From NCBI GenBank assembly GCA_964252035.1, contig OZ176203.1: a stretch of DNA of 64,000 bases. One strand, written 5' to 3'. Source of the stretch: Podarcis erhardii (taxonomy: Eukaryota). Within the stretch, counting starts at the first letter, position 1. Every line of letters starts with the position of its first letter. The notes beneath the pieces were generated by a model. It was not told the DNA's origin and searched no databases. It saw only the letters and a program-made list of their open reading frames with translations. Positions 1-28,025 of the stretch are shown in pieces. The translations under genes and the position numbers were made by a program.

Positions 1-452
1 CTACAAATGATCACAAGCCCCTCACATTGGTGTGTGTTCTTATGTGTCAGCAGCAACAACACAAGGTGCTGTTGGCCCTTCAGAAGTCATGGACTTGTAT
101 GCTGTCACCACAGCTGGGCCTTGCCATGGAGCTGTTTTCTTCTGAGTAAGGACATCCTCATTCCTTTGTTTTTCATGATCACTGGCAGTGTAAAGTACTG
201 ACATCAGATTTAAAGACATAATATTTTTTCTGGACCACCAATTTGGCAACCATATTTATGGACAATTTAACATGTCTCAAATAAAATTTACATATGGACG
301 GGCTACAGTGAGGAATGGCCTATACACTCTTTAGTGGCTGTCTTTTAAAATAGTATAGTATAAGGCTGTAAATACCTTGTTGGCTTGCACATGTCCACTA
401 GCTATTCAATCAGTGATAATAATGGCAAAGATCCCTAACCTATCATCTCTTG

Positions 453-490
453 GTATGAGCTTTCGTGTGCATGCACACTTCTTCAGATAC
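453..490 (-). ncRNA. Minimal type I hammerhead ribozyme motif (inverted arm of the palindrome)
   Basis: Exact reverse complement of 495-532. Predicted cleavage between 457 and 456 on the - strand. Confidence 0.8.
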
Positions 491-494
491 ACGT

Positions 495-532
495 GTATCT
501 GAAGAAGTGTGCATGCACACGAAAGCTCATAC
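495..532 (+). ncRNA. Minimal type I hammerhead ribozyme motif (intact core)
   Basis: GUAU-CUGAAGA-A-GUGUGCAUGCACAC-GAAA-GCUC/AUAC. Stem I GUAU:AUAC, CUGANGA core, one extra A before G10.1, stem II GUGUG:CACAC, GAAA, palindromic AGCU stem III. Predicted cleavage between 528 and 529. Confidence 0.85.
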
Positions 533-781
533 CTAGAACTAACTCAGTTGGTCTTTAAGGTGCTACTGGAAGGAATTTTTTTATTTTGTTTTGACCATGG
601 CAGACCAACACGGCTACCTATCTGTAACTATCATCTCTTATTGATCACCAGTTTCCATAGCACTCTATTTGCTTCTCATTGGTCGCATCCAAATACTTCC
701 CAACAACCTTCACAAACTACAGTTCCGAGGTTTTTTGGGGGAAAGCTGTGACTCTTAAATTTCCACAAGAATTCTTTAAAT

Positions 782-917
782 CAGGCTTCCTCAACCTCGC
801 CCCTCCATATGTTTTTGGCCTACAACTCCCATGATCCCTAGTTAGCAGGACCAGTGGTCAGGGATGCTGGGAATTTTAGTCTCAAAACATCTGGAGGGCC
901 TAGGTTGATGAAGCCTG
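782..917. mobile_element. hAT-type hairpin MITE (~136 bp)
   Basis: TIRs CAGGCTTCCTCAACCT / AGGTTGATGAAGCCTG. Perfect 8-bp TSD CTTTAAAT (774-781, 918-925). Confidence 0.85.
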
Positions 918-1026
918 CTTTAAATGTATGTGATGGATGTGCCCTTCATTGATGGCCTGCAATCCTTCATGTGAAAATCATACGATGATTTCAGTTTTTT
1001 TCTACAAGTATTACTGTAGTACACTA

Positions 1027-1106
1027 AGGCTGCAACCCTGTATATGTTTTCCTGAAAGTAAGGCTAATTGAACACAATGGGGTTTAATTCTGAGTAGACA
1101 TGCCCA
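1027..1106. repeat. Old short interspersed repeat (GGCTGCAATCCT...CTGAGTA.ACATG family)
   Basis: Its reverse complement aligns with the split copy at 22443-22760 plus 25529-25542. Other degenerate copies occur in the window, e.g. about 10400-10530. Confidence 0.5.
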
Positions 1107-1989
1107 TCATAGTAACTAAGTAGGTGTGGTTGGGAAAACAATGAAGGGCAGGGATGAATTTGGTCTTCTGCAAAAGGAAGGCATATCATGAAGCAAATGA
1201 TCAATAGCTTGAAAAAAATGTAACCAGGAGAAATGGCAAGGCCCACTTTCCCCAAATCATCTCTTTTAAATTTTATACCTTGAGAGTCTGCTCTAAAGGT
1301 ACTCTGCTCTTAACCACCTGAGCTATCACAATCTTCAGGAAAATAATGTATGGTAATTGCTGGCAAGAGTAGCCAAGTTCACTTGCAGAGTTTTTCACAT
1401 GTCAACCCAAGTGTAGTTGATAATAAGACAGAAGAATGCTTGAGGGACAGCAGTGTTTTGGAAAGCCAACAATTATCCAATGGCAGCTTAAAGTTATTAT
1501 GATCTGACAGACACTTGCCAAGGGCAGTGCATGCTAAAAATATACCCTGCACACATTCCTGGGTTTTACTACCAGGACGTTATGATGAACATAGACTGCA
1601 GCCCAACTTCAGAGTATCTTAAAATTATTACTTCTAATCACATACAGACACTTAAGCTGTGCAGTAGTTCCTGCCACCTTCATTTCCTCCCTTTGCATTC
1701 AAGGATAGCTTTAGTCTGATTGTGTTGATTGGAGCCTATTGATTCACAGAGTCTTGGGTGTTGCTGATGTTTTAAAGGAAATCCCTTGGTTCCAGCATGC
1801 AAATGGATCTCCCTGCTACCCCACATACATTAAGTACATACAGTATTGTCAGAGCATTCCATGGTAGATCTTCTGCATATCCTTTCAGGGAATCTCATCT
1901 CCTGGAATTAGTCTAGCAGTCACATGCTCAGATGGCTCAGATCTTCCACACGATGTATGTGTGTGAAAAGACACACTACAGGTATGCTG

Positions 1990-2121
1990 TGTATCTGAAG
2001 AAGTGTGCATGCACATGAAATCTCATACCTAGAACTAACTCAGTTGGTCTTTAAGGTGCTACTGGAAGGAATTTTTTTATTTTGTTTTGACCATGGCAGA
2101 CCAACACGGCTACCTATCTGT
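1990..2121 (+). mobile_element. Penelope-like pLTR fragment, 132 bp, with a 13-bp TSD
   Basis: Near-identical to 493-624. Perfect TSD TACAGGTATGCTG (1977-1989, 2122-2134). Confidence 0.85.
1991..2028 (+). ncRNA. Degenerate hammerhead motif (probably impaired)
   Basis: GTAT-CTGAAGA-A-GTGTGCATGCACAT-GAAA-TCTC/ATAC. C11.1 to T leaves a G.U pair, and G to T at 2021 destroys the AGCT stem III palindrome. Confidence 0.65.
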
Positions 2122-2151
2122 TACAGGTATGCTGGATAGAGTACCCACAGC

Positions 2152-2556
2152 TAGGGGGATCAATCTGAATTAGTTTGCACTTGAAGGTGAAGCAAACAAA
2201 TGAGCACTTTTTGAAACAATGAACAAACACAGCCCTACTATGAGATTTGCACATCTCTGAATTTTGCAGTACGAGTTCTGCCAAGTAACATACACAAAAA
2301 TGCAAATACCAGGCTAAAGTGTGCATAAAATACATATCTTTATAAACATAATCTACAAAAATGCATTATATTAGGCAAAATTGCATTGCAAAATATGTAT
2401 ATTAGGAGAAATTCACACTAAAATACCGGTGGATTTTCATGGGAACTTTTAAAAACAATATTCACCAACCAATATGGAAAAATGGAAAAAATTAACTTAA
2501 GACTAGAAAACTGAGAAAATGAGAGACACCAAAATAGATTGATTCGCCCATCCCTA
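2152..2556. mobile_element. Old non-autonomous DNA transposon (TAGGGATGGG-type terminus)
   Basis: Right end GATTCGCCCATCCCTA. Body is homologous, in opposite orientation, to 8811-9694. Left TIR is degenerate. Confidence 0.5.
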
Positions 2557-3789
2557 TCCACACCACACCTTGAAGTTTTGTATATACAAACCTTGTGGAC
2601 ATTAGCCCAGGCATTGACAATATGTGGCAGGACGCTCCTGAAGAGCTGATTCTCCTGGCTCCTATCCCTTCATTTCCAGCTTTAGGATACTGCTTGTGAT
2701 GGGCTATCTAAGTTTCTTCACAGCATGGGTACCTCTCCCCTGGGATGCACAAGACATACAGTTTGGGATGCACAACTGAGGGACTGTTCTGTGAATCAGG
2801 AAAGACTTCATTCAAATCTGTCGTTGACCATAAGCTACTGCTTACCTTGCAAGTTTGGCATATGGATTGTTGAGACAATGGCCAAAAATGTTCATTTACC
2901 CACCACTTTATGAACCCCTCCTTTCTTTCTGCCACACACCAGTTTTGGCACAGAGACTCTGACTCACATAAAGCTTGGGTACCTTGGAATTTGCTGCAAC
3001 ATCTGAACCAGGGAACTCTGGTTTAGTGTCAGGAATAAACCAGATAGTAAATCAGATTGTGGTTTATGAAGCTATGGACGAATGCCCAAATTCAGTCAAC
3101 ACATAAGAAGAGGGTGGTAATCTAAAGTGTTATTTAAATGTGAAATATTAGATATATATTTTTAGAATGAATACTGCACCACATTGTGTTTATTGTGAAG
3201 CCAAAATTATTACAAGGTTTTGCTTTCATTGTCAACATCCATATCTTCCTCTTTAACAAATGCATTTCCTGAGCACAACTGAATCAGAAAGCCATTTCTA
3301 ATAAATATTCATGATAGCCTCTCACTACCACAAGTACCTGTGTAGCAACAGCCAAGAGGGTGAAGAATGAGATGCTGAAAAGTGATCAACAAATGCGCTC
3401 TCAGTAGCAAAGGAAGAAGGCTGCAAAATCAATTCAGCTGTAGAGCCAAGATGAGATGGCTCAGCAAAAGCAAAGTGCTCAGGATTGTTTTGGGAAATCA
3501 TTACTGCAGCTTGTTTTGGAATCTAAAATACACAAGCTTAAAATGCCATGATAGAAATAATATTCTCTTTCAGCAGTTCCAGAAGAAAAAAGTGTCCTCA
3601 CTGTGAGATACTCAAGAGGCATAATGAACAATTTAAGACAGAAACACTCACCGGGGGGTGGGGGTGGGTGATGACAAATTTCAAAGATAAATACAAACAA
3701 TCTAACACTTGTCATGAAGCAAGTGATATATGGGAGAACAATCATATACCAATGAACTCTGAAGTTCATTAGCATTTACTCTTGAGTAA

Positions 3790-4060
3790 GGGGGAGCTCC
3801 CGTTGCTCGGTCCCTGCTCCTGCCAACCTAGCAGTTTAAAAGCATGTCAAAGTGCAAGTAGATAAATAGGTACCGCTCTGGCAGGAAGGTAAACGGTGTT
3901 TCCATGTGCTGCTCTGGTTCACCAGAAGCAGCTTAGTCATGCTGGCCACATGACCCAGAAGCTGTACGCCGGCTCCCTCGGCCAGTAAAGCCAGATGAGC
4001 GCCACAACCCCAGAGTTGTCCGTGACTGGACTTAATGGTCAGGGGTCCCTTTACCTTTAC
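3790..4060 (+). mobile_element. Sauria SINE, 5'-truncated
   Basis: High identity to 4750-5029. Typical 3' end GGTCAGGGGTCCCTTTACCTTTAC. Confidence 0.9.
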
Positions 4061-4664
4061 GGATGTTTAGCAGGCTTTCCAAAACTGTGGTCCACAAATG
4101 TCAGTCAGGTGATCTGTAAATATATAATAAAAATCATACACCAACTAACAGAGAACATGACAATTGTGAAAAAAGCAAAAAAAGGGGGGGGGGTCTGCCA
4201 AGACCCTTAATAATTTTGGTGTATAGGATTCCACAGTGCTATTCTTCTAGAAAACAAGGTGCCAGAACTCACCATGAATGCCTCCCTTGTTCTCTTATGA
4301 TGGCAATGGCATCCACCTGAGAGGTGCTGGAACTGAGTTCTGGTGAGTTCTTGCTAAAAAAGAAGCCCTGGGATTCCAGCCTAAAAGGATTAATCCTAGA
4401 TGGGAGTTGGGGAGAAGCACATTGAATAGCTAAGGGTCTAGAGATTCATAAAGGAAGATCCAGGTAAAAGGTGATTTGATATTTAGATAGATAAATTAAA
4501 CAAATAATTGTATCCAGTATAAGTCATACTTACAGTGGACCTCAGCTGGTGATATTCATTAATTAAATGAGTCTACTCTGAGTATGGCCAACAGATACAA
4601 CCCACAGCTTATCTGTAAAAAAAACCATATGAAGTCCATTCTATCATAGTTGAACCCTTTCTAT

Positions 4665-5029
4665 GATGCGGGTGGCGCTGTGGGTTAAACCACAGAGCAT
4701 AGGGCTTGCCAATTAGAAGGTCGGCAGTTCAAATCCCCGCAATGGGGTGAGCTCCCTTTGCTTGGTCCCTGCTCCTGCCAACCTAGCAGTTCAAAAGCAC
4801 ATCAAAGTGCAAGTAGCTAAATAGGTACCGCTCCGGCAGGAAGGTAAACGTTGTTTCCGTGTGCTGCTCTGGTTCGCCAGAAGTGGCTTAGTCATGCTGG
4901 CCACATGACCCAGAAGCTGTCTGCAGTCAAACACCGGCTCCCTCGGCCAATAAAGCGAGATGAGGGCGCAACCCCAGAGTCGGCCATGACTGGACCTAAT
5001 GGTCAGGGGTCCCTTTACCTTTACCTTTA
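4665..5029 (+). mobile_element. Sauria SINE, near full length
   Basis: tRNA-like head with A box (GTGGCGCTGTGG) and B box (GTTCAAATCC), body with GCAAGTAG.TAAATAGGTACCGC, (ACCTTT)n tail. Confidence 0.92.
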
Positions 5030-8000
5030 TGAGCTGAATAGAGAAACAGATAAAACACTGGCAACAAGCAGATTCCAGCATTTAAGAATCAAGTATGCTT
5101 TTCTTTGTTTGGTCTTATTCTGATTTGTGTTTCCCAGTCACTTTAGAGGCATGAGAAAAACAAGAAATGCGAATTTTACCTTTTTAGTGGTACCTAGTTT
5201 TTGCACACACCCCTCTCTATCCTCCATCTGGGCAAGCAATAAGCAGTAAGGAAACATTCTAGCCAAGGAAAAATATCCCAGAAGGGTGCAAAGTGAGGAG
5301 GAAGGGTGAGGAGTATGGCCTGAGAAGAGTCCTGAGGGCCAGAAAGAGATGCTGTGGACAGGCACATTTGGTCCCCAGGCCTGAGTATCCCCATCCCCAT
5401 GCAAAGTGTGATAGAACAGTGGTAGCTTTTAGATGGATTTGTGTCTATCTGATAATTTACTTTGGGGTGTGGGAGAAATGATCTGGCAAGCCAAGGATGT
5501 CCCAGCTTCTCAGCTGGGCGGTGCGAGCCTTTGATCTTAGATGACAGCAGGTAGCATTGCCCATCACTATGCCTTCTTCCAAGACCCAGCAATTCCCAAA
5601 GAGAATCTATTTAACGATGCAACTGCAATGAGCTGCTTTAGAACACACTTGTACTGTGTCGGAATGAGGACGGTAATTGCCTTCAGCTATCTAAGGAGGG
5701 TGACACTGACAGAAAACAAAAGTAAATATTTAATACTGAAAGGAGTGCATAAATGTTAAGGACTAAGTACATTTCTAGATCTGCAAGGGCAATTAACTTT
5801 TGGCCTGTTTAGATGTTGCTGGAACTGTCTACATTAATAGCCTGATTTATAGAGGATGCCTTGTAAGCTTTTGCGCTAATGCCTCTTTGATTGTACAATT
5901 GTTGGAACTATGTATGCTTGCCAGAACAATAACATTTGAAGGGCTGGGTTTTAAAGTTCACAAAAATGCAAGTGCAGAATTCATCTCTTGTGCAACTCAG
6001 AAAGGATTCTCCATATTCTGCATGACTGACCCAGAAATGCTTTTCTTTTGCTGGGGTAGGATGTTTCTGTTCTAAGTGATTGTCCTGGAGTCAAACCTTG
6101 ATTCTAAACTACAACTTAATTAACCACGATCTTAAAAAGAACCTGTTTTGCCAGCGCTTTAAGCATGACTCAGTGTCATTGTGAGCAAAGGATGCTTTGT
6201 TCAATGTAGAAACATGAAAGGGACTGACTATATCATTAGAATACGCCATATTATGTAGATTTACTTCTAGAACTTATATGTCCACCAAATGGTGGAAATG
6301 TGAGCATAATCTTACCATAGGAAGGATATCGCTGGGAAGGCAAGTTGCAGTCAACATTCCTCTTTGTAACCAGTACTGACCCATCATCCTTCCTCTTAAT
6401 GCTTTATATGCCAATCCTTTGAGATCCCATACTCCTTCGATTTCTCCTTTGCTACCTCCCTCTCTTTCCAGATTTATCTTCTCTGTTCCTTTCGACCAGG
6501 GGCAGGCAGGAAACTTTGTTCAGCCCAGTAGCCACAGTCCATCTTACACAACCATCTAAGGACAGTGGGGAAAGCTTGCAACAAAGGTGAGTGGAGCAGT
6601 GAGTGCAACTCTTATCTTTGCACAGTCAGCTATATTCCAGATGTGCAAAAGTCAAAGATTTCTATACACACCTCTCTCCATCCAGACAAGCAAAAAGCAC
6701 TGTCAGAGTCTAAGGACACATTCCAGTCAGGCCAAGCGCTTAAGGAGAATGTGGAACAGGACTTGTGATGGATTAGGTAGAGTCTCAATGGTCAGATAGA
6801 AAGGGCTGAAGGGGCACCTGCCCACAGGCTAGAAGTTCCTCATACCTGTCTTATATCTCTGTCACCTCCTCTCTTTCATCAGCCTCCAGTTATTCATATC
6901 CCACCTTTCTGTCTCTTACCCTTCTGATTCCTCTGCACTGCCTTTCCTCCCTGCTTTCTCTTACCACCTTAGCTTGGCATCTTTACTTCTGTGCCAATTT
7001 GTCCAGTCTAAATTCATCCCTCTGCCTCTCGGCATCCCGGTCTTCAATCCTGCTCAGCTGTTGCCACAGAGTTTAAAGATTTGTAATCATGCAAATGGGA
7101 CTGTATAAGAAGGTTGTTGTTGGCATCTGTCTGTCTCAGGAGGAGTGCACCTTTAAGGGGTGAAGTCAAACTGTCAGAAGGTTGAAGCACCAGCTGTGGC
7201 TGTAGAGAAAGCTATGGGAGAGAGATGGGAGAGAGATGTTTTGTTGCAGCTGGGGCAGATGGAGGCAGCTAGTTGTGTTGATGCAGATGCACCATGGTGT
7301 TTCTTCTCTCTGTGCCCCTCACAGTGGTTATTCCTCTTCTGCTCACTATTATGGACCTGACTGCCATTGGTACAAATACTTGCAGCCCTACTTATTCTGT
7401 CAGCTATACTATTTTTTAACCACTGCAGTTCTTAATAGGGGAAGTTGAGGACGTTATTCTTGGATGTTAAATGTTCCCTCCGGACTATTAAGTCTCCCTT
7501 CCTTTCAGATTTTTGATATCATAGCTTTTCTCTTGTTGGGCTGTGAGACCCCACATGCAGAACTCCATCTGTGGGCTTCACCTAGTGCTTACCTAGGGCC
7601 TTAAAGTTTTTTTTAAGTACTTTTGAGTAATCACCTTCTGCTGTTGTTTTATGCTGTTTGTTTTGCTGATGGCTGCACATTGTTTTAATACATTGCACAC
7701 TGCCTTGCAATAGATAATAAAGGACAGTATAGGAGTTTTTTTCGAATAAAGATTGCTCCAACCTGTGCTTGCAAAGTGGCTCAGTAGAAGAGGGCATGCA
7801 GTAATACAGGCATACAGAACATTATGTAGCTATGTGTTCTCAACTCAATCTACAAACCCATCAAAAAACAATTCTTACTAGACTAGCTAATTCTAAAAAA
7901 AAAAGTCAATGCATACTGAGTTGACAAGTAATTGAAGAAGTTGCCTGTGCCCGCATATCTCATGAATATTATACGGTTCAAAGTATTAGTCCTTTCACCC

Positions 8001-12941: not shown

Positions 12942-13636
12942 CACACCTCTTTGTCCAATAGCCACTGAGGTAATGAGGTCTCCCACTCTCAGACGGGGGC
13001 GGGAGGATTGCCTTGAAGACCAATCAAGGAAAATGCAACTGGCGGCGTCTAAACCTAAGGGGAAGAGAAGCGCGCGCTTCTCAGGAATTTCCACAGCTCC
13101 TCCAAAGCACCGAGAAAGGTGCACGAAAAGGGCCGGGGTGTGCGTGGGGGGGGGGTGGTGCACCCCTCGCCCTTCAGCTTCTGACAGGATTATTTTAAAA
13201 AGGAGGGCAGGGGGAGACCGCGTCAGCAGCTGCAAGAGCCATGTGCAAAAGGCAGGCAGCAGCGTTGCGGCGTGTTTTCGTTGTAAATTTCAAGCAGCAG
13301 CTCCCTCCAGCCGGTCGTTTGTTGCTCCTCCTCCCGCTTTTCTCTCTCGCCTCGCCCGCGCGCCCCGCCCTCTCTCCGGCTCTTGCCGCAGCTGCAGGAA
13401 GCCAAGCCCCGCCCTCTCATCCCCGCGTGCGACCGACCGACCGGCTGGCTGGCTGGCGGGCGGGCGAGTGAGGCAGAGAGAGAGCGAGACTCGGGCCAGC
13501 CCCATTGTCTGCGCTGAGGCGCCGGCGGGAAGCGCGCGAGGAGCGAAGGCGCACGACCGGTCTCCAGAGAGCCAGGCGAGCGCGCGCGCACATCGCACAC
13601 GCAAGCAGGCAAGCCAAGAAGCTGCGCCCGGGCGCG

Positions 13637-13720
13637 ATGCGGGGCGCCAGCCGCCGCTTTGCAGCTGCCGAGAGGCTCCCCCGACACCCGGGCCGGGCTC
13701 GGGGCAGCGGCAGCTGCTGA
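13637..13720 (+). other. Candidate upstream ORF, 27 aa (MRGASRRFAAAERLPRHPGRARGSGSC)
   Basis: ATG at 13637 with G at -3, TGA ending at 13720, 95 nt upstream of the PRKX ATG. It is a uORF only if transcription starts upstream of 13637. Confidence 0.45.
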
Positions 13721-13815
13721 AGAGGGAAGGAGGCCGGGCCGGCGCCGGCGCCCCAAACTTCGCCCCTTTGCCTGGACAGGGCGCGCCTTTTCTTCCTCCC
13801 TCCCCTCGCCGCCCC

Positions 13816-14002
13816 ATGGAGACGCTGAGCGCCGTGCGGGCGAAAGTAGGGGCCAGGAGCCCCGGCGGCTGCGAGGCGGGCGGCACCGGCGAGCCCCAGC
13901 CCGCGCCGTCTTCCAGTCCTGCCGGCCGAGGCTCTCCGGCGCACCCGGCGCCGGACTCGCCCGCTTATCGACTGGAGGATCTGGAGACCTTAGCCACTGT
14001 TG
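13816..14002 (+). CDS. PRKX: PRKX coding exon 1 (METLSAVRAK...YRLEDLETLATV-G)
   Basis: The end matches the PRKX motif YSLQDFDTLATVG. Donor GTGAGT at 14003. Phase 1 joins exon 2 to give GTGTFGRV. The start ATG is inferred from expected N-terminal length. Confidence 0.88.
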
Positions 14003-15757
14003 GTGAGTGAGGCTGGGCGCCAGCCAATGAAAAACAAAGGAAGGGGGGATAGAACGTCTGCAGCCGCAGCCGCCCCCCCATGACCACCCACCAGGTTTAA
14101 GAGGCGTCTCTGACTGGCAAGGGACACCCCCCTCCTTTTTAGCGCCCTCGCGATACGTAATTCTGGTCACCTCTGGACTCACAATGCCATACCTCTGGGG
14201 CGCTCCCTAGACCAGGTAGTGAAATACAACCTTGCGGTGTCCCTCCTTTTGGAGATCATTCTCTCTGAGAGCCAAGGCAACCGGAAAGCTGTTGCTACTG
14301 CTTTCCTTCCCCAGGGCAGAGCCCCAAAGGATGCTGCCAGCTGCTAACACTGTGCCATCTCCACAAGCATGGATGGGCGCACCTCATGCCCAGGAAACAG
14401 TTTGTTTCTTTGGCGTCCAGGCTCACTTCTTAACACGATCTGGGCTTGGTGTCTTCCTTCCTGTTTTCGTATCCGGAAAGCTTCCCCAGTACTTTTTATC
14501 AGAGAGAAACAGAACAAGCTTTTTGCAGATGGCAGTTGAGAAGCAGGCAGGTGCCCAGCGGTGCTTGAGAACTGTCAAACCCAATGTGGAGAAGTCTGCT
14601 GTTTGGTCTCTGTTTTTCTGCCAGTAGTCTGGATTTTGCCCAAATCTGTCTGGTGGCAAAAAGCTGAACTGGTTTTGTAAACAGTGTGTGGTCCTGTTTA
14701 TCCCAGAAACTACTCTGAGTTTGCAACCCACAAACCCTTTGAACAAAAATATTAGCATGTAAATTGCTCTGAGTCCTGGCGACATCATTGAGCTTTCAGC
14801 CTGTTTAACTGAATAATATGCTGTTTAAGCAGTGCATCAGTCATAACCTTATGTTGCAAGTAACTTTGATGCTTGCTTTCACAAGTGTTGTGTGTGAAGT
14901 AATTATGCAAGTTGATGTATGTTTATAGCTCTTTATGCTTATACTGAGTGTGTGCGCTCTTCCTACAGTTCGCTTGCAAATTCCATCCAAGCTCCTGTTA
15001 ATATTAAACATGGCTTGCAACTGTGGGCTTGTTCTTCTGTTCAGCGGCTCGGGTTTCATGATATCCAAAGCATTTTAGTATTGCTCACGTGATGAGCTGG
15101 AATGTGTATTCCATTTTAAAGGCAGATAATCTGTCAAATCTTAAACAGGACCCAGGACCAAGGGAGTCTTTCACTTGGACATGACTTTCTTCCCCAAATT
15201 TCCCCTCTTGAGGGATGTTTGCATCTGATCTGCGTAGATGGTTTTGTTAGCAGGCATTGGCTGCAGTGGGAGAGGAAGGAGAAGGGACACAGGGGAGGAG
15301 AGGATATGATTACAGTGCCATATGACACATGGGGAAATCTGATGTGAAATACTCTGTAAGAGAGGGCACCTGACATAAACAACCGCTGCCATTTGTTTCG
15401 ACTTAAAAGGCCCTTTCATACATTACTCTCTGTATTTTGTACAGTAGATCCCAACCTCTTGGTGCCTAGCACTGCTTAGGGTGGCGAACACCAAATAAAA
15501 CCTGCCATCAGATGAGTTCATATTTATAAAAGTACATAGGAGGGGGAGGGGCAGAGTTCCTCGTTGCATGGGTTGTATTCAGTATGGCTCTAAGGTGATT
15601 TCTTCTTGCACAACAGAATGTTCTGCTTGTCTCCTCCCCCTGGCTTTGGAGCCCACCCCCCAACTGCTCAGGATTTCCCCCCAATCCTCTGGAGCAGATT
15701 TGGGGATGGCTCAGAGTCCATGAAGGAGGAGAGAGGATCTCGTTGCATTGGCGCTAA

Positions 15758-19496: not shown

Positions 19497-19500
19497 TTAT

Positions 19501-20886: not shown

Positions 20887-21636
20887 TTACTGTCAACATG
20901 CATGTATTGTAATTGTAGACTTTAGCCGGCTAGTTTTTATGCCTATAAGATAAGAGGTCCATTGATTCAATGGGCCTTAAGTGTTGTTGAGTCCTCTTTT
21001 CCCTCAGTGGTCCTGCAGTATCTGGTCTGCAATGCACCTTTCTCTACATGCTTCAACTTTTTTGATGCCGTGAAGTACTGCTCTGCTTTTAGTGTCTGCT
21101 GCCTGACCCTATGTTTACAAGTCTCTTTGTGATATTATCCGCGAACTGTCATAGACTTCTCATCTGCTTTTTCTTGCTTTTCCCTTGTTAAAAAGGGCCT
21201 TGTATAGTTACTCAGGGAGCAGATTGCTTAAGGGCATTGGCCAAACCTTTGATTTTCTGTTCAAAGATCCTTCATCTAAGTGAAATTGTGCTGGAGGATA
21301 TTTACATTATGGACTCCTGAATGATACCTTATGGGTGCAGTGGTCACAGATCTGTAATGTTACGGCTTTTTCTTAGGGCTGAGTGAAAAGCATTCCAAAT
21401 TATCCATGCTATTTGTGGGTGACAAAATTTAGAGGGGCCATTTTTGCTTAATATTCTCTGGGATGAGGAGGTTGAATTCTCCAATAGTTTGCATAGGGGG
21501 GAAAACCAAAAAGCACAGAAAAGTCATCTTGTGATTCCCACCCCCCAACTTAATGTTAAATGAAACACTGTTGTTTATATTGATAGATGAAGGACTCCAT
21601 GTTGTAAGAGTAAGACATGAAGGAGTAGCATCAAAC

Positions 21637-21787
21637 CATAAGTGCCAACTTCCTGGGTGCCCGAGCACCCACAAAATTCCCCATGAAGGGGCCGGGCACC
21701 CACAAATTTCAGTGCCAGGATCATGCACATTGCATGGCACCCATGGCCCTGGGCACCCATGGTCGCGGGGCCAAGCTGACACTCCTG
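21637..21787. mobile_element. hAT-type MITE
   Basis: TIRs CATAAGTGCCAACTT / AAGCTGACACTCCTG (11/15). 8-bp TSD CATCAAAC / CATTAAAC. Confidence 0.7.
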
Positions 21788-22460
21788 CATTAAACCCATT
21801 TTTTTCCTTCAGCAAATATTAAACTATATTGGGCTGGATATACAGTTGTACTCAGAATTCCCCATTCTGCATACTGGGAAATTGTACCAGCTCTGTGCAT
21901 GTCCTAAATATCAAGGCAAAATGCAATGATTTCGGGGCAAATGCACATATTCCCGAGTTGGATTGTTCTGTTAACATGGAATGTTGTGATGGACCCTGGA
22001 ATCCCAAACCATTTGAATAGGTTGCAAGAAAGTTGCAACAACCCCCCACATTTTCTGAGAAATGAAACCAAGCTGGCCAGGAAAACTCCCAGAGCTTGAA
22101 TGACAAGGGAGATTGCAGAAATAAGGTGAATCTTGTAGTCACTGCACACATCTACCACAGATTCATGGAGAATTCAGGAGAACTATTCTGCTGAGACATC
22201 CTTTAACATATTTGGGTTTCTTTTTTTGTGGGGTGTATATGTGTTGTGTTCCAAAGAAAAGTATATTACCAGTTAGTTCTCAGAATGTTCCTTTTCTGAT
22301 ATATTTATCAGAGTTCAAGCCTGGTTTTCAGCCTTTTAAAAAACTATTATATTGCCGCATCTTTATTTTCATAAGTGAAGTGTTATGCTATGTTGCAGGG
22401 CATGTTCTATTAAAAGAGAAGAGGTATTGGAAAGGACACTCGCAGCACAATCCTATGCAT

Positions 22461-22718
22461 CAGAGCTTTCCAAACTGTGTGTTGTGACACATTAGTGTGT
22501 CAGCTGCAGTGTGTACAGTAGTTGTGTCATGCAAACACTCCCCACGCTCATCTCATGGCTCAAAACACTCCCCACGCTCATCTCATGGCTCAAAAGGGCT
22601 TAGTTTAACCTCTGGTTTGCTAGTAAAACTGAATTACTATGTCACGAAATGATGCAAAACTGAATTACTGTGTTGCGAAATGATGCATGTCCAAATATGA
22701 ATAGTTTGGAAAGCTCTG
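22461..22718. mobile_element. hAT-type MITE with two internal tandem duplications
   Basis: Perfect TIR CAGAGCTTTCCAAACT / AGTTTGGAAAGCTCTG. TSD CTATGCAT / CTATACAT. Homologous to 63012-63207 in opposite orientation. Confidence 0.88.
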
Positions 22719-22761
22719 CTATACATGTTTATTCAGAAGTTAGTCACATTGATTTCCATGA

Positions 22762-25530
22762 GGATTACCCTCAGTTAAATGGATTACCCTCAGTTAAACG
22801 GCATTGAATGTGTTGGCCTAGTGTGGGGCTCCGAGGTGAGCTTGGCTGTCTGGCTGGTGTACCGGCCACCTAGCACACCAGCAGCCACCCTGTCAGGCCT
22901 GCTGGAGGCGGTGGCTGGCTGGGCCTTGGAGTTCCCTAACCTATTGGTATTGGGGGACTTCAACATCCATGCTGATGCCACTCCCTCCTCACAGGCTCTG
23001 GACCTGGTGTCTTCCATGGCGACACTAGGGCTCTCCCAGTTTGTTTCGGGCCCCACACATCAAGCAGGCCACACGCTGGATTTGATCTTTGGCATCGGTA
23101 TAGATGTGATCATGTTTCCTTCAATGAAGGTGCCATGGTCTGATCACTATGCTCTGAAAGCCAGGATTGACGTTCCACCCCCACCCTGCTTGGGTGGCGA
23201 GCCAATTTGGGCTCGCCCGCAGAGGCTGATGGACCCTGATAGATTCCGTCAAGCCTTGCGGGACCTTTCTCCCCCTGGCGACTCATTGACTGAGCTTGTT
23301 GAGGCCTGGAATACCCAGCTCCTGGCAGCCATCGATGAGATCGCACCTAAGCGCCCTCTGCGACCCCGCAGAAACCGGGCTCCCTGGTTTACCGAGGAGC
23401 TCCGGAAAATGAAGCGGGACCTCAGACGGCTAGAGCGAGTATGGCGGGGTGCCCGTGACGGAGCTTCAAGAACATCTTATAGGGTTTTTATGAAAACCTA
23501 TGAGATGGCAGTGAAGGCCGCTAAGAAGTCCTACTTCTCGGCCTCCATTGCATCCGCTAGCTCTCGCCCGGCGCAATTATTTAGTATAATTCGGTCTTTA
23601 ACGTCCCTTGAAGGACAGCCAAATTTAAATAACAATTCGACACACAGCTGTGAGGCATTCGCGAGCTTTTTTGCGGAGAAGGTCTTGTTGCTCCGCCATG
23701 ACCTCCCTGCCAATTTGGATACAATAAAGGAACTGGAGGCCCCTCGACTGTCCTCGGGTTCAGTATTAGACCACTTTGACTGGATATCCCCAGCTGATGT
23801 GGACAGACTCCTCCGAGCTGGAAAGCCCACCACCTGTCCTCTCGACCCGTGCCCGTCCTGGCTGATTAGAGCGTGTCCAGACGAGGTGCGGGGCCCCCTG
23901 GGGGATATCATCAATCTGTCTCTTGGCGCTGGGACATTCCCAGGGGAACTGAAGGAGGCAGTGGTGCGCCCGCTCTTAAAGAAAACATCATTAGATCCTT
24001 TAGATCTATCCAATTACCGCCCGGTTTCGAATCTTCCATTCCTGGGTAAGGTGATTGAGAGAGCGGTTGCTGAACAGCTTGGTAGGTTTCTGGATGAAAC
24101 ATCAGCTCTGGATCCATTCCAGTCCGGCTTCCGCGCTGGTCATGGGACCGAGACGGCTCTGGTCGCCCTAACAGATGATCTCCGCAGGCAGCTGGATCGA
24201 GGCGGGTCGGGGCTGCTGATTCTTCTAGACCTGTCAGCAGCCTTCGACATGGTCGATCACGAACTCCTAGACCACCGCCTTGCCGACGTGGGGATCCAGG
24301 GCACAGTCCTTCAATGGCTGCGCTCGTTTCTCTCTGGTCGGGGACAGAGGGTGGCGCTTGGGGGGGAATTGTCATCCCGCCACTCCTTGGTGTGTGGTGT
24401 GCCCCAGGGTGCAATACTCTCCCCGATGCTTTTTAACATCTTTATGCGCCCCCTCGCCCAGCTTGTCCGGAGTTTTGGGCTGGGCTGCCATCAGTATGCT
24501 GATGACACCCAACTCTATCTGTTGATGGACGGCCACCCGGACTCGGCCCCAGACACACTGATCAGATGCTTGGAGGCTGTGGCTGGATGGTTTCGTGGGA
24601 GCCGGTTGAAGTTAAATCCTTCGAAGACAGAGGTCCTCTGGCTGGGACGGGACGACTTGGGACTGAGGGGGCAACTCCCATCTCTTGCGGGGGTGCAATT
24701 AGTGCCAGCACCGTCCGTTAAGAGTTTGGGTGTAATCTTCGATACCTCCCTCTCTATGGAGGCGCAGATTGCAGCTATAACAAAGGCGGCATTTTTTCAT
24801 CTCCGCCAAGCTAAGCAGTTGGCTCCTTACCTCTCTCGCCCTGACCTAGCCACTGTGATCCACGCGACGGTCACCTCCAGACTGGATTATTGTAACTCGC
24901 TCTACGTGGGGCTGCCCTTGAGACTGACCCAGAAACTCCAACGGGTGCAGAATGCCGCAGCGAGACTCCTTACGGGGTCTTCGCTTAGAGATCACATTCA
25001 TCCGGTGCTATACAAGCTGCACTGGCTCCCGGTGGAGTACAGGATCAGGTTTAAGGTGCTGGTTTTAACCTTCAAAGCCCTATACGGCCTAGGGCCCTCG
25101 TACCTACGGGACCGCCTCTCCTGGTATGCCCCACAGAGGAACTTACGGTCTTCAAATAAAAACACCTTGAAGGTCCCAAGCCACAGAGAGGTTAGGCTGG
25201 CCTCAACCAGAGCCAGGGCTTTTTCGGCTGCGGCTCCAACCTGGTGGAACGCTCTGTCACAAGAGACAAGGGCCCTGCAGGACTTGACATCTTTCCGCAG
25301 GGCCTGCAAGACAGAGCTGTTCCACCTGGCCTTTTGTTAGGGCGCAGCCTGACTCCCTCCTTTGGCAATCTTTTCAAGACTTTAGCTTATGGTTGCCATT
25401 AATTTTGTTTTTAACTCATTTTTATAATGTTTTATAATGTTGTATTGTTTTAGTGTTGTTAGCCGCCCTGAGCCCGGCTTCGGCTGGGGAGGGCGGGATA
25501 TAAATAAAATTTATTATTATTATTATTATA
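22762..25530 (+). mobile_element. Young 5'-truncated L2-clade LINE
   Basis: 853-codon frame, 3' UTR ending GCCGCCCTGAGCCCGG...GGGCGGGATATAAATAAAAT and a (TTA)n tail. CpGs are retained. Confidence 0.93.
22779..25340 (+). CDS. L2 ORF2: C-terminal half of the APE endonuclease plus a complete reverse transcriptase and C-terminal region
   Basis: Endonuclease motifs VYRPP, GDFN, SDH. RT motifs YRPVSNL, QSGFR, LLDLSAAFD, GVPQGAILSP, YADD. L2-type SRLDYCN and LHWLP. No stops or frameshifts. The ATG is made by the 5' junction duplication. Confidence 0.9.
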   Translation: MDYPQLNGIECVGLVWGSEVSLAVWLVYRPPSTPAATLSGLLEAVAGWALEFPNLLVLGDFNIHADATPSSQALDLVSSMATLGLSQFVSGPTHQAGHTLDLIFGIGIDVIMFPSMKVPWSDHYALKARIDVPPPPCLGGEPIWARPQRLMDPDRFRQALRDLSPPGDSLTELVEAWNTQLLAAIDEIAPKRPLRPRRNRAPWFTEELRKMKRDLRRLERVWRGARDGASRTSYRVFMKTYEMAVKAAKKSYFSASIASASSRPAQLFSIIRSLTSLEGQPNLNNNSTHSCEAFASFFAEKVLLLRHDLPANLDTIKELEAPRLSSGSVLDHFDWISPADVDRLLRAGKPTTCPLDPCPSWLIRACPDEVRGPLGDIINLSLGAGTFPGELKEAVVRPLLKKTSLDPLDLSNYRPVSNLPFLGKVIERAVAEQLGRFLDETSALDPFQSGFRAGHGTETALVALTDDLRRQLDRGGSGLLILLDLSAAFDMVDHELLDHRLADVGIQGTVLQWLRSFLSGRGQRVALGGELSSRHSLVCGVPQGAILSPMLFNIFMRPLAQLVRSFGLGCHQYADDTQLYLLMDGHPDSAPDTLIRCLEAVAGWFRGSRLKLNPSKTEVLWLGRDDLGLRGQLPSLAGVQLVPAPSVKSLGVIFDTSLSMEAQIAAITKAAFFHLRQAKQLAPYLSRPDLATVIHATVTSRLDYCNSLYVGLPLRLTQKLQRVQNAAARLLTGSSLRDHIHPVLYKLHWLPVEYRIRFKVLVLTFKALYGLGPSYLRDRLSWYAPQRNLRSSNKNTLKVPSHREVRLASTRARAFSAAAPTWWNALSQETRALQDLTSFRRACKTELFHLAFC

Positions 25531-27027
25531 GGAATGCAGCCTCAGAGGGAGACTGGGCTTTTATCTGGGGTTTTTTTGGGGGGGGGTGTGGTATGGTTGT
25601 GTTGCAAGTTTAAAAGGCTCAAATGCTATGGAAATGTAACTTTTCTTCAACAGGAAGCTAGCATATTTATAGCCTCATCCTCTTTTTTATGTTTGTGATA
25701 CACAGTTGCATCGTTTCCTTACTCCCTTTATGTCCTGAGATCTACAGTGTAGCATTAAATTTATTTATTATCTTTCTTTGTTGTCGCTTGGCACACATTC
25801 ACTGATGCAAACTATCGTAGACTTGTGTGTTTAGTTTCAAGAAAACTCTTGTTTCCTTTTGTTGAATTGTTTTGTTTTGTTTTTTTGTCACAGTTACCTC
25901 CTAGCATTGCTTAGGTTGCCCTGTGCTTAGTCTTGAAAATGCCCTCTGGAATGGGAATTGTGAGAGCATGTGAGCTTGATCATTTTCAGAGAGGAAGAAG
26001 ACTTTAAACAACACACAAACACACCATCCCGTTTTCAGTGGCTATAACTAATAAATGGGACAAATAACAGTGGAATAAATAATAGTTGAATTCAATGTAT
26101 TTATATAATTTATTATTAACTAAGTATTTTAATATCTAACCTGATCCAAAGGATTGAGCAGAGATAGAAACAACATTAATAATAGGGAGTTGCTTTCTAG
26201 AACTATGAATAAACACAATATCATCTCTCTACTCCTCAACAGTTGTTGCAATGCTAAAATCTTAAGACTGCTTTTTGTTCTTCTTTTGTATACCATAATT
26301 CGTCCCCACCACCACCACTCTCAGCTAAAGATCATCCTGTAAGCTGGTCTGCACATTAAAGCCAAACCATAGAACAAGCCTTATGTTCTTCAGTTAATAG
26401 TAGTTAAGATAACAAAATTGAGATATGAAAATTCTGCTTTAAGGTTAAGAAACAAACTGAAGCAGGTGTTTCACCTTACAGTATTGAGTTGCTCCCTTTT
26501 TATTCCAAGTTTCACATTGGTTTCTTTATGGTAACTCAATGGTTCATGTTCGAAAGTTCTACTAATGCCCTAAATAAGAATAGTGTTAGTGGATATCTGA
26601 CACAGAAAATAAAGCTGGATTGTTATGTACCATTGGTTTTCTTAGTGAGCATGGGTAATACTGGGTTCAGTTTCCCCAACCTAGAATGAACCACTCTTGC
26701 ATGATATTTTTTAACCATCAAGGACCTTGTCTGTGGAGCATTCCTTGCATTTGAGGAGAGTTATTAGCTTATATGATTCTCATTAAACCTCGGGTCAACT
26801 GTAGATAAGTTGTGCGATTATCTTTTAACAGAATGGTGCTGAAATGGAACATGTTCACAATAGTTCCGTTAATTTTTTTTTTTTCTTGAGTCACTTTCAA
26901 TGTAACTCAGTATCAAATATTAATGTATTCATTCTGGTTACAGATAGGTAGCCGTGTTGGTCTGCCATAGTCAAAACAAAAAAATTCCTTCCAGTAGCAC
27001 CTTAAAGACCAACTAAGTCAGTTCTTG

Positions 27028-27065
27028 GTATGAGCTTTCGTGTGCATGCACACTTCTTCAGATAC
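27028..27065 (-). ncRNA. Minimal type I hammerhead ribozyme motif (intact), antisense to PRKX
   Basis: Identical to 495-532 on the - strand. Predicted cleavage between 27032 and 27031. Confidence 0.85.
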
Positions 27066-27098
27066 ACTGAAACAGAAGTTTCCAGACCTTTCTATATA
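27066..27098 (-). promoter_or_regulatory. Candidate TATA box + initiator of the PLE pLTR
   Basis: The - strand reads TATATAGAAAGG...TTTCAGTG. TATATA starts at 27098, exactly 30 nt upstream of the A (27068) of TCAGT. Confidence 0.55.
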
Positions 27099-28025
27099 GT
27101 GAGAAGGTGGGGAGGGGTATTACTCAGAAGTTATAAATAGCAGAAAGATGCTATAAACAAGCTATAAATAGCAGAAAGATGCAGCAAACACACAAGTGGG
27201 AAGAAGGCCTCTTCACACAGAAGTCTTTTTTTAGAAGCAAACAATTAAAATTGGGTATGTTTCTATAGCATGAAAAATACAGATGTTGCTTAAAAACACC
27301 TGTCTTTATGTACTAAACGTATGTGTAAGGTAAAGGAAAGAATGATCCATCTCTAAAGGCTGTGGCACTCCAGAAGTCTTCCAGCTCCCATTATCCCAGC
27401 CTGCCCTTGCAGGATGGGGCTGATGAACTACAGCTTATCCACCCCTGGAATGAGGTTGAGCAATGTGTTTCTAGTAGCCAGCCAGGCACCTTTAAGAAGG
27501 TTACCAGCAGGGCAGTGGAGGTGATTGTTTCCTTCCATCCCTATGATCTGACATTCTGAGAGAAATAGCTTTTCAACATTTGTGCTGTTGCTTAATGACT
27601 GTGGCTGATTTATGTCTGCTCCACACAAATTTGCCACATCATTTTCAAAAGGCTTCTAGGGTAGCAGCTATTGCCATATTTTGGACTAATGACTTCTCCA
27701 AGTTGGGTCTACTTGTCCCTCAAAGTCATCCTGGAGTAGATCCTAAAATCAAAAGAATTCTATAGATGTGTGAGGATTGTTTAAATGTTTAAAACTATTG
27801 CCTGAGGAAGGGGTTGTGTTGACCATCCTTCCCCTGTCCTGTCAGTTAAGATTTGGTAGGCAAAAGGTCACAAAGTCTGCTTGCATTTAGAAAGGAATGA
27901 ATGGGTGAATGTTTTGCCTCTTGGCTAAAGGCAAGAGAGAGAAAACAGTTTTGAAAGGAAACATGGAACTAGTTATATGTTCCTTTGTAGACCAACCTTA
28001 TGCTAGGAGAAATGTGGCTCTAGAG

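What the first reader, a model, noticed from the sequence alone, without database searches (positions are those of the whole stretch)
452..27130. Candidate mobile ~132-nt hammerhead-headed RNA unit derived from a Penelope pLTR (SINE/retrozyme-like)
Seen: three copies share the same 3' end (CTACCTATCTG at 624, 2120 and 26941). The long copy places a TATA box at -30 and a TCAGT initiator (A+1 = 27068) 3 nt upstream of hammerhead stem I. The two short copies begin at +2 (493) and +2/+3 (1989/1990) of that predicted transcript. Each has its own TSD (11-16 bp and 13 bp), so they are independent insertions. Both keep the ~36 nt upstream of the predicted cleavage site. Known: PLE pLTRs carry minimal hammerheads that cleave poorly as monomers and better as dimers. 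Inference: the short copies are full-length cDNAs of an uncleaved ~132-nt RNA that starts at the pLTR promoter and is mobilised in trans by a Penelope RT/GIY-YIG protein, i.e. a non-autonomous ribozyme-headed family rather than random 5' truncations.
Basis: partly seen in the sequence, partly recalled or inferred. Interest (0 to 1): 0.8.

Follow-up and report, generated by a model that had tools for sequence, protein, structure and literature searches.

The report
Hammerhead-headed Penelope run-off mini-copies
Three ~130-base insertions are the last module (hammerhead ribozyme to reverse-transcription start site) of a very abundant, still active lizard Penelope-like retrotransposon. Most copies in the genome begin at one fixed base just in front of the ribozyme, which most likely marks the element's transcription start rather than a separate small mobile RNA.

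Summary
Three copies of a 129-133-nt unit (493-627 +, 1989-2121 +, 27067-26937 -) share a 5' start within 1-2 nt and a 3' end within 3-4 nt. Copies 1 and 2 have private TSDs of 12 and 13 nt. The head is a minimal type-I hammerhead built like the tested Anolis PAc ribozyme, though Rfam does not detect it.

Contigs of public runs show copy 3 is a 220-nt insertion, absent at the same site in three other samples, so it is recent. It carries 63 nt of conserved upstream family sequence with GC-box, TATA and initiator. Summed word depth is 10^4-10^5 times single copy and drops 4.0-4.5-fold exactly at the hammerhead's 5' edge. In two RNA libraries the drop is 24-fold.

The "132-nt RNA" and the self-propagating SINE-like family are not needed. 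Published PAc biochemistry places the 3' end at an internal reverse-transcription start, so the template RNA runs past the copy's 3' end. The short copies lack the promoter.

Best reading: run-off cDNAs from the start site to the promoter-proximal priming site. No start site was mapped directly and no autonomous partner was found. The scan's first readers noted similar elements elsewhere in this genome.

The parts
440..451 (+). Copy 1, left target-site duplication (ctatcatctctt)
   Evidence: Exact repeat of 628-639.
452..492 (-). Copy 1, inverted arm: reverse complement of unit positions 1-41, with an intact hammerhead on the minus strand (core 486-457). Its outer end overlaps 4 nt of target (tctt = rc AAGA of unit positions 42-45).
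   Evidence: blastn 492-448 vs unit 1-45; descriptor scan; 82-nt perfect hairpin, -73.8 kcal/mol.
493..627 (+). Copy 1, direct unit. Hammerhead: stem I 495-498/529-532, core CUGAAGA 499-505, stem II 507-520, GAAA 521-524, AGCU 524-527, cleavage predicted after C528. T-run 575-592. Stem 547-554/602-609 holding the AC-rich strand. 3' end CTATCTGTAA(C).
628..639 (+). Copy 1, right target-site duplication
1977..1989 (+). Copy 2, left TSD tacaggtatgctg (its last G may be the element's first base)
1989..2121 (+). Copy 2, unit, 98.5% identical to copy 1. Hammerhead has C11.1->U and AGCU->AUCU.
2122..2134 (+). Copy 2, right TSD
26937..27067 (-). Copy 3, unit (91-93% identical to copies 1 and 2; 5-nt shorter T-run). 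Hammerhead core to cleavage site 27061-27032, cleavage predicted between 27032 and 27031.
   Evidence: 3' boundary fixed at 26937 by the empty-site joint and by the loose-end class at 26937.
27068..27130 (-). Copy 3, upstream pLTR segment shared with many other copies: CCCCTCCCCACC (27117-27106, about -49 to -38), TATATAG (27098-27092, about -30), initiator TTCAGT (27070-27065, A = 27068).
   Evidence: Word depth 1.7-2.0 million at 27080-27092 against 99 single-copy. 44 contigs continue past 27130 with one conserved sequence (agreement 0.86) that contains CCAAT. Motif background.
27131..27156 (-). Copy 3, 5' junction filler: 26 nt, of which 20 (gcatctttctgctatttata) duplicate the adjacent upstream target at 27163-27182. 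No canonical TSD.
   Evidence: Joint 26936->27157 skips 220 nt with 'both = 0' in X1, X4 and X16; repeat search.

Best explanation
The unit is the 3'-terminal module of a Penelope-like element (PLE) family of this lizard. It consists of a minimal type-I hammerhead, about 70 nt of spacer with a T-run, and a stem-loop holding an AC-rich strand, and it has no poly(A).

The proposed steps are:
1. Promoter-bearing source copies (pLTRs with CCAAT, GC-box, TATA and Inr) are transcribed by Pol II from a start 1-4 nt in front of hammerhead stem I. The uncleaved ribozyme is therefore the extreme 5' end of the RNA.
2. The PLE RT/GIY-YIG protein nicks AT-rich DNA and starts reverse transcription internally, about 130 nt downstream of that start. 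This is the equivalent of the PAc +111-119 sites.
3. When priming uses the promoter-proximal site, the cDNA runs off the RNA 5' end after about 130 nt. The result is TSD-flanked 129-133-nt copies (copies 1 and 2).
4. When both target strands prime, two run-off cDNAs meet head to head and give a spacerless fold-back (copy 1).
5. When priming happens on a pLTR that lies downstream in a longer or tandem transcript, 5'-truncated copies keep promoter sequence (copy 3).

The short copies lack the promoter, so they are by-products, not masters.

Shown: the anatomy, the TSDs, the sharp genome-wide 5' edge, the conserved upstream sequence, the recent insertion of copy 3, and the stronger drop in RNA. 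Inferred: the TSS itself, the internal priming (by analogy with PAc), the twin priming, and the dead-end status.
For: - Same 5' base in three independent insertions, and private TSDs for copies 1 and 2.
- Spacerless palindrome centred exactly on that base, with 4-nt microhomology at the arm's outer end.
-, empty site: a 2252-nt X1 contig with 0 mismatches, an X4 contig and an X16 contig all lack 26937-27156.
-, DNA depth: 8.76M at 27040 against 1.96M at 27080 in X1 (4.5-fold), and 4.0-fold in X4.
-, loose ends: 27065 (67 and 55 contigs) and 26937 (76 and 78 contigs) have unrelated AT-rich flanks, whereas 27130 continues into conserved sequence.
-, RNA: the drop across the same edge is 23.7-fold (X16) and 23.9-fold (X18).
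-, cleavage site: depth does not rise 3' of the predicted cleavage site.
- TATA+Inr at the right spacing is rare by chance, 1.8e-4 per position.
- PAc biochemistry (PMC11167929): internal RT start at +111-118 in an AC-rich stem-loop, RNA needed to +172, both DNA strands cleaved and extended, product length follows the RNA 5' end through the hammerhead, and uncleaved RNA is the dominant substrate.
- The PAc pLTR also has TATATATT plus a CCATACC initiator about 11 nt before its hammerhead.
- The hammerhead layout is identical to PAc's: CUGANGA, one extra nt, stem II, GAAA, a palindromic 4-mer, then C at the cleavage site.
Against: - No direct TSS data (CAGE, 5'-RACE or raw reads). Contig word depths are neither copy numbers nor expression levels, and a few loci may dominate the RNA ratio.
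- The modal genome-wide 5' end is 27065 (+4), and A27068 is never included in short copies.
- D. virilis Penelope has a TATA-less internal promoter (PMC2377424), so an upstream TATA promoter is not a general PLE trait.
- Unlike PAc, this module is non-coding in the PAc-equivalent frame (stop at codon 18). The analogy is therefore imperfect, and the sources could be non-coding elements.
- No RT/GIY-YIG ORF shares the window.
Confidence: 0.55

Rival explanations
1. The promoter-hammerhead-priming-site module is an independent non-coding, Pol II-driven, non-autonomous retroelement (a PLE parasite, retrozyme-like or SINE-like). Its own promoter-bearing units, possibly in tandem, are the masters, and an unrelated autonomous PLE supplies the protein in trans. 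The 130-nt copies are then its commonest product.
For: - The module is closed in the frame where PAc's ORF starts and has no ATG-led frame.
- Summed word depth of 10^4-10^5 times single copy is far above typical autonomous PLE counts.
- Joints show tandem arrangements (27065->26978-26987; 27065->26937 with a 23-nt spacer).
- The upstream-bearing copies seen in RNA are mainly a variant (27081G/27087T) that is 0.25% of the DNA depth. This fits a few dedicated source loci.
- A 2026 preprint derives animal retrozymes from PLE pLTRs and treats monomers as non-transposing offspring.
Against: - No master was seen, and what lies upstream of the 93 nt of known pLTR sequence is unknown.
- The short copies themselves lack the promoter.
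- The copy boundaries are not at the ribozyme cleavage site, unlike retrozymes.
- There is no Pol III head, and the internal T-run is incompatible with Pol III.
Confidence: 0.25
2. The common 5' end is a reverse-transcriptase stop, not an RNA end. The enzyme stalls or dissociates at the 5' edge of the folded or protein-bound hammerhead on longer templates.
For: The edge coincides with the first base of stem I. About a fifth of the DNA word depth at the ribozyme persists upstream of the edge (1.96M at 27080 against 8.76M at 27040), so longer templates exist. A strong stop would also make both twin-primed cDNAs end at one base.
Against: - A structure-induced stall is expected on the 3' side of a helix, before it is unwound, not after the whole ribozyme has been copied.
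- In PAc in vitro, product length follows the RNA 5' end at -126/-145, through the ribozyme.
- A stall does not explain the correctly spaced TATA/Inr or the about 5-fold stronger drop in RNA than in DNA.
Confidence: 0.1
3. The RNA 5' end is real but is made by processing of a longer transcript (an unknown nuclease or another ribozyme conformation), not by initiation.
For: PLE hammerheads are proposed to process tandem transcripts (PMC4209133; PMC6765202). RNA is depleted upstream of the edge.
Against: The hammerhead's own cleavage site is 36 nt further 3' (after C528 / 27032). No excess of copies begins there. No second ribozyme motif lies upstream. The promoter motifs are an unexplained coincidence under this view.
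Confidence: 0.07

Closest known systems
Poseidon_Ac (PAc), the Penelope-like element of Anolis carolinensis, and its pLTR/hammerhead/'tail' module (Frangieh et al. 2024, PMC11167929)
   Same: - Minimal type-I hammerhead of identical layout.
- Fixed 3' end without poly(A), about 120-130 nt downstream of the ribozyme's 5' edge, in or next to an AC-rich stem-loop.
- AT-rich targets.
- Uncleaved RNA as template.
- A TATA-like box plus initiator shortly upstream of the ribozyme.
   Different: - No sequence similarity beyond the ribozyme core and a CAACAC-type motif.
- PAc's ORF starts inside the ribozyme, whereas this module is non-coding in that frame.
- A dominant class of copies starting at the ribozyme's 5' edge is not described in the parts of that paper read here.
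Single, dispersed minimal hammerheads of truncated PLEs, and PLE inverted 5' arms (Cervera & de la Pena 2014, PMC4209133; Craig et al. 2021, PMC8557442)
   Same: Widespread single min-HHR motifs 'probably related to truncated PLEs'. Pairs on opposite strands. An inverted 5'-truncated copy adjacent to the insertion.
   Different: Here the truncation is not random. It falls at one base that matches a predicted start site, and the palindrome centre lies on that same base.
Animal non-LTR retrozymes (Cervera & de la Pena 2020, PMC7229834; Li, Clavereau & Pollet 2026 preprint)
   Same: Non-coding, hammerhead-bearing, derived from PLE pLTRs, presumed to be mobilised by PLE proteins. Dispersed monomers exist.
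   Different: Retrozymes are tandem units bounded by ribozyme cleavage sites and yield circular RNA. These copies are single, TSD-flanked, start 36 nt upstream of the cleavage site and end at a priming site.
Schistosome Sm-alpha/Sj-alpha SINE-like hammerhead retroposons (reviewed in PMC6765202)
   Same: A short interspersed element in which a promoter is followed by a hammerhead.
   Different: As I recall, those have a Pol III-type tRNA-like promoter inside the element. Here the promoter is upstream, of Pol II type and not carried by the short copies. No tRNA-like head was found, and the internal T-run would act as a Pol III terminator.
L1 twin priming (inversion with 5' truncation; Ostertag & Kazazian 2001, from my own knowledge)
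   Same: Copy 1: the second target strand primes internally by microhomology and gives an inverted arm inside one TSD.
   Different: Both cDNAs run to the very end of the RNA, so the arms meet without deletion or spacer. The element is a PLE, whose protein extends both strands in vitro (PMC11167929).

Membership tests
Penelope-like element (PLE) insertion product | Minimal type-I hammerhead with a very short palindromic stem III | tested here: met
   CUGAAGA, one extra A, a 5-7-bp stem II, GAAA, AGCU, C at the cleavage site and a 4-bp stem I are present in copy 1 (both arms) and copy 3. Copy 2 is mutated. The layout matches the PAc ribozyme.
Penelope-like element (PLE) insertion product | Fixed 3' end without poly(A), set by internal RT initiation near an AC-rich stem-loop downstream of the hammerhead | tested here: met
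   The 3' ends fall within 3-4 nt (624-628, 2121, 26937) and there is no A-tail. Stem GUUGGUCU/AGACCAAC is predicted. The loose-end class at 26937 has unrelated flanks. That this is an internal priming site is inferred from PAc, not shown here.
Penelope-like element (PLE) insertion product | Variable-length TSDs, AT-rich targets, and frequent inverted 5' arm or tandem arrangements | tested here: met
   TSDs of 12 and 13 nt; inverted arm in copy 1; AT-rich flank consensus and tandem joints. Copy 3 has an atypical one-sided 20-nt duplication.
Penelope-like element (PLE) insertion product | A cognate RT + GIY-YIG ORF sharing the same pLTR | not testable with these tools
   No PLE ORF is in the window. 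The 853-aa ORF at 22779-25340 is an APE+RVT_1 LINE. Collection scans and a peptide search found no further copies.
Hammerhead ribozyme (Rfam Hammerhead families) | Match to a curated covariance model | tested here: not met
   No hit at the gathering threshold on the whole window, and none at E<=10 on 26800-27300. I would expect minimal PLE variants to fit these models poorly, but I did not check this.
Hammerhead ribozyme (Rfam Hammerhead families) | Self-cleavage activity | not testable with these tools
   Needs an in vitro assay. PAc's equivalent cleaves only with its protein. The computed domain-swapped dimer (-12.7 kcal/mol) is no better than two monomers (-13.6).
Non-LTR retrozyme | Tandem units delimited by hammerhead cleavage sites, giving unit-length circular RNA | tested here: not met
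   Copies 2 and 3 have one ribozyme each. Copy 1 has two, on opposite strands, not in tandem. Boundaries lie 36 nt upstream of the cleavage site and at a priming site, within TSDs. Circular RNA was not testable.
SINE | Internal Pol III promoter (tRNA, 7SL or 5S head) and a LINE-type 3' tail | tested here: not met
   ARAGORN found 0 genes and Rfam found nothing. The T-run at unit positions 83-100 would terminate Pol III. There is no poly(A) or LINE-like tail.

The most novel reading that the evidence does not exclude
The promoter-hammerhead-priming-site module is a self-sustaining, non-coding, Pol II-transcribed parasite of lizard Penelope-like elements. It is currently active (copy 3 is absent from other individuals). 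Its commonest product, the ~130-nt start-to-priming-site run-off copy, has reached tens of thousands of copies. The same start-site-then-hammerhead geometry in PAc would then mean that the long-unexplained PLE hammerhead works as the 5'-terminal structure of the transcript rather than as a cutter.
Probability: 0.25. Interest if true: 0.65.

Novelty: new variant of a known kind. Interest (0 to 1): 0.5.

Why it matters
What PLE hammerheads do, and where vertebrate PLE transcripts begin, are open questions (PMC8557442, PMC11167929). In this family the genomic record acts as a natural 5'-end map:
- Most of the word depth over the ribozyme (about 78% in X1, 75% in X4) stops at its 5' edge, at one position 1-4 nt after a TATA-positioned initiator.
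- The copies there keep the 36 nt upstream of the ribozyme's cleavage site.
- The depth profile gives no sign of copies starting at the cleavage site, although rarer loose-end classes were not listed.

This extends to living lizards the in vitro conclusion that uncleaved RNA is the substrate. It suggests that PLE proteins very often prime at the promoter-proximal site and so produce dead-end mini-copies that make up a visible share of the genome. It also offers a concrete, cheap test (CAGE or 5'-RACE). For annotation, these units should be read as PLE products, not as a new SINE or retrozyme.

Tried and rejected
- Rfam at the gathering threshold and at E<=10 found no hammerhead or any other family at the copies.
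- Whole-window blastn found no further copies or fragments.
- A search for a PLE ORF in the window found only an APE+RT LINE. GC-rich ORFs at 12.8-14.6 kb have no Pfam match.
- Exact-pattern scans of metagenome, prokaryote-genome and viral contig collections gave nothing, or 20-mer chance hits only.
- A protein-collection search with the 44-aa ORF across the unit, meant to reach lizard contigs, found no candidates.
- Earlier-findings look-ups by sequence and by 'GIY-YIG ORF' words were blank.
- I first assumed copy 3 was an old short copy with chance flanking motifs. The empty-site joint and the depth profile rejected that.
- I considered a coding reading (frame 2 is open for 41 codons). I rejected it because there is no ATG, the stretch is T-run encoded, and copy 3 has a 5-nt indel there.
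- I considered Pol III transcription because of the A-box-like TAACTCAGTTGG. I rejected it because there is no B box, the motif lies about 45 nt from the start, and there is an internal terminator.
- The loose-end classes at 26972, 26978 and 26981 look mostly like alignment breaks at the indel-prone T-run. Whether some are 'tail-less' 3' ends about 30 nt short could not be settled.
Full report
WHAT IS THERE

The window holds exactly three copies of a 129-133-nt unit: 493-627 (+), 1989-2121 (+) and 27067-26937 (-). Copies 1 and 2 are 98.5% identical to each other. Copy 3 is 91-93% identical to them and has a 5-nt shorter T-run.

All three begin homology at the same base, the G of GTGTATCTGAAGA. 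Their 3' ends fall within 3-4 nt (CTATCTGT / CTATCTGTAA(C)), with no poly(A).

Copy 1 is flanked by ctatcatctctt (440-451 and 628-639). Copy 2 is flanked by tacaggtatgctg (1977-1989 and 2122-2134). These are independent insertions.

Copy 1 also carries a 41-nt inverted arm (452-492). The insert is therefore a spacerless palindrome centred at 492/493. The outer end of the arm overlaps 4 nt of the target (tctt = reverse complement of AAGA at unit positions 42-45).

THE HEAD OF THE UNIT

The head is a minimal type-I hammerhead:
- stem I GUAU/AUAC
- core CUGAAGA plus one extra A
- stem II GUGUG-CAUG-CACAC
- GAAA
- the self-complementary AGCU in place of stem III
- C at the cleavage site, 36 nt from the unit's first base

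A descriptor scan finds this motif only at 499-528 (+), 486-457 (-) and 27061-27032 (-). Copy 2 is mutated (AUCU, C11.1->U).

Rfam finds nothing, at the gathering threshold or at E<=10. The layout is nevertheless the same, element by element, as the ribozyme of Poseidon_Ac (PAc) from Anolis. That ribozyme cleaves in vitro when its protein is present (PMC11167929).

The rest of the unit folds into a stem GUUGGUCU/AGACCAAC that holds an AC-rich strand close to the 3' end. The overall fold is no more stable than shuffled sequence (z = 0.5).

GENOME-WIDE EVIDENCE

I laid Logan contigs of four public runs on 26300-27800 at >=85% likeness. X1 is the best DNA holder, X4 is a related species, and X16 and X18 are RNA libraries from two studies.

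(a) Empty site. A 2252-nt X1 contig matches 26300-26936 and 27157-27800 with no mismatch and skips the 220 nt in between. An X4 contig and an X16 contig do the same. Copy 3 is therefore a recent insertion of 220 nt, absent at the same site in three other samples. It consists of three parts:
- the unit (26937-27067)
- 63 nt of upstream sequence (27068-27130)
- a 26-nt filler (27131-27156) whose 20-mer repeats the adjacent upstream target at 27163-27182
It has no canonical TSD.

(b) Abundance. 25,807 X1 contigs were laid. Summed word depth is 3-8.8 million over the unit against 99 in the unique flanks. The tool warns that this is not a copy number. Three copies in 64 kb would extrapolate to the same order for a genome of about 1.5 Gb, a size I assumed from the about 1.2-1.6 Gb of contigs per DNA run.

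(c) The upstream 63 nt are family sequence. Depth there is 1.7-2.0 million. 44 X1 contigs continue beyond 27130 into one conserved sequence (agreement 0.86) that contains a CCAAT motif in element orientation.

(d) The step at the ribozyme's 5' edge. Depth is 8.76M at 27040 and 1.96M at 27080 in X1 (4.5-fold). It is 2.10M and 0.52M in X4 (4.0-fold). The best-supported loose-end classes with unrelated AT-rich flanks are 27065 (5' end; 67 and 55 contigs) and 26937 (3' end; 76 and 78 contigs).

(e) The same step in RNA. It is 23.7-fold in X16 and 23.9-fold in X18. The upstream-bearing contigs in RNA are mainly a variant (27081 T>G, 27087 C>T) that makes up 0.25% of the DNA depth.

(f) The cleavage site. 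Depth does not rise 3' of the predicted cleavage site, as it would if many copies began there. It is instead higher over the first ~40 nt of the unit. That fits frequent inverted arms like the one in copy 1.

(g) Ribozyme-core variation. The only variants above 10% are the two CpG transitions at 27039 and 27040.

PROMOTER-LIKE LAYOUT

In element orientation the conserved upstream sequence carries:
- CCAAT at about -84 (from the loose-end consensus)
- CCCCTCCCCACC at -49 to -38
- TATATAG with its first T at -30
- TTCAGT with A = 27068, 3 nt before stem I

A TATAWA box correctly spaced from a BBCABW initiator occurs at 1.8e-4 per position and strand in this window.

The PAc pLTR given in the paper's File S1 also has TATATATT followed 31 nt later by the A of CCATACC, 11 nt before its hammerhead. 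I read this by eye. It suggests that the geometry is shared by two unrelated-looking lizard PLE families.

HOW IT MOST LIKELY WORKS

Frangieh et al. showed the following for PAc:
- Reverse transcription starts internally, at +111-118 of the ORF that begins inside the ribozyme, in an AC-rich stem-loop.
- RNA up to +172 is needed.
- Both DNA strands are cleaved and extended.
- Product length follows the RNA 5' end through the ribozyme.
- Uncleaved RNA is the dominant substrate.

In PAc the span from the ribozyme's 5' edge (-9) to the priming sites is about 120-128 nt. Here it is 129-133 nt. I therefore read the unit as 'start site to priming site'.

Pol II starts 1-4 nt before stem I of a promoter-bearing copy. 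The PLE protein primes at the promoter-proximal internal site, and the cDNA runs off the RNA end. This explains the three copies as follows:
- Copy 2 is the plain product.
- Copy 1 is the twin-primed product: both target strands primed, both cDNAs ran off at the same nucleotide, and they met head to head.
- Copy 3 was primed on a pLTR embedded in a longer transcript and was truncated at -63.

The short copies lack the promoter. By analogy with PAc they also lack the 3' recognition RNA. They should therefore be dead ends. The preprint by Li et al. takes the same view of retrozyme monomers.

Shown: the anatomy, the TSDs, the sharp edge, the conserved upstream sequence, the recency of copy 3, and the RNA/DNA contrast. 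Inferred: the start site, the internal priming, the twin priming, and the dead-end status.

RIVALS

(i) A non-coding, promoter-bearing, non-autonomous lineage is the source. The module is closed in the PAc-equivalent frame. Tandem joints exist. A rare variant dominates RNA.

(ii) An RT stop at the ribozyme's 5' edge. This is unlikely. Stalls occur before a helix is unwound, not after. PAc RT reads through the ribozyme in vitro. A stall also leaves the promoter motifs and the RNA contrast unexplained (0.10).

(iii) RNA processing rather than initiation. The ribozyme's own cleavage site is 36 nt away and shows no excess of copy starts, and no second ribozyme lies upstream (0.07).

COMPARISON AND NOVELTY

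Already known:
- single dispersed minimal hammerheads from truncated PLEs, inverted 5' arms, pLTR promoters and internal priming (PMC4209133, PMC8557442, PMC2377424, PMC11167929)
- pLTR-derived non-autonomous hammerhead elements (PMC7229834; 2026 preprint)

The unit fails the tests for a retrozyme: boundaries are not at cleavage sites and there are no tandem units. It also fails the tests for a SINE: no Pol III head, an internal T-run and no A-tail.

What I did not find in the papers read here is the discrete 5' terminus at the ribozyme's edge, its coincidence with a TATA/Inr start, and the dominance of start-to-priming-site mini-copies. I rate this a new variant of a known kind, with moderate interest.

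First readers of this scan noted many similar Penelope/hammerhead fold-backs and one 'hammerhead at the extreme 5' end of the transcript' elsewhere in this genome. These notes are unchecked and are not independent support.

LIMITS

- All genome-wide evidence comes from one call on assembled contigs, not reads.
- No start site was mapped.
- The autonomous partner was not found.
- The species is known only as a lizard, and only from earlier unchecked notes.

Noticed in passing
window 22779-25340 (+): Intact 853-aa ORF with RVT_1 (E = 1.9e-36) and a weak Exo_endo_phos_2 match. It is an apparently young non-LTR (LINE) element, not a PLE. RNA runs X15-X20 held 10-12% of the sampled words of 24500-29500, possibly this element's 3' end (not checked).
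   Followed up: partly
window 13000-14500: CpG-island-like block (GC 63-74%) with long overlapping ORFs on both strands and no Pfam match. Plausibly a host-gene promoter and first exon.
   Followed up: partly
window 55621-56298 (+): 225-aa ORF with a Pfam ALKBH8_N match (E = 5.7e-20) over residues 82-123. Its nature was not examined.
   Followed up: no
window 27081 and 27087 (table 3): In both RNA libraries a large share of the upstream-bearing family contigs carry 27081 T>G and 27087 C>T: 71% and 78% of depth in X16, 40% and 54% in X18. This variant is only 0.25% of the DNA depth. A few specific loci seem to supply most promoter-region RNA.
   Followed up: no
window 26978-27065 (tables 5 and 5c): Many contigs join the unit's 5' edge (27063-27065) directly, or through 1-6 nt, to the T-run of another unit (26978-26987), or to a full 3' end after 23 nt. 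These are head-to-tail arrangements with a roughly 90-nt period, reminiscent of the retrozyme-like arrays noted elsewhere in this genome.
   Followed up: no
window 26972-26981 (table 7): Loose-end classes in the T-run are mostly indel alignment breaks. The X4 consensus, however, keeps only about 9 element letters before turning AT-rich, so some copies may end about 30 nt short of the usual 3' end. That would be a possible counterpart of the two PAc priming sites and the 34-nt 'tail'.
   Followed up: no
Poseidon_Ac consensus, positions 2617-2667: The Anolis PAc pLTR has TATATATT, and 31 nt further on the A of a CCATACC initiator, 11 nt before the hammerhead's stem I. This is the same promoter-then-ribozyme geometry as here. 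Read by eye only.
   Followed up: partly
window 22536-22597 (+): A roughly 31-nt direct tandem duplication (cactccccacgctcatctcatggctcaaaa...) lies about 200 nt upstream of the LINE ORF.
   Followed up: no
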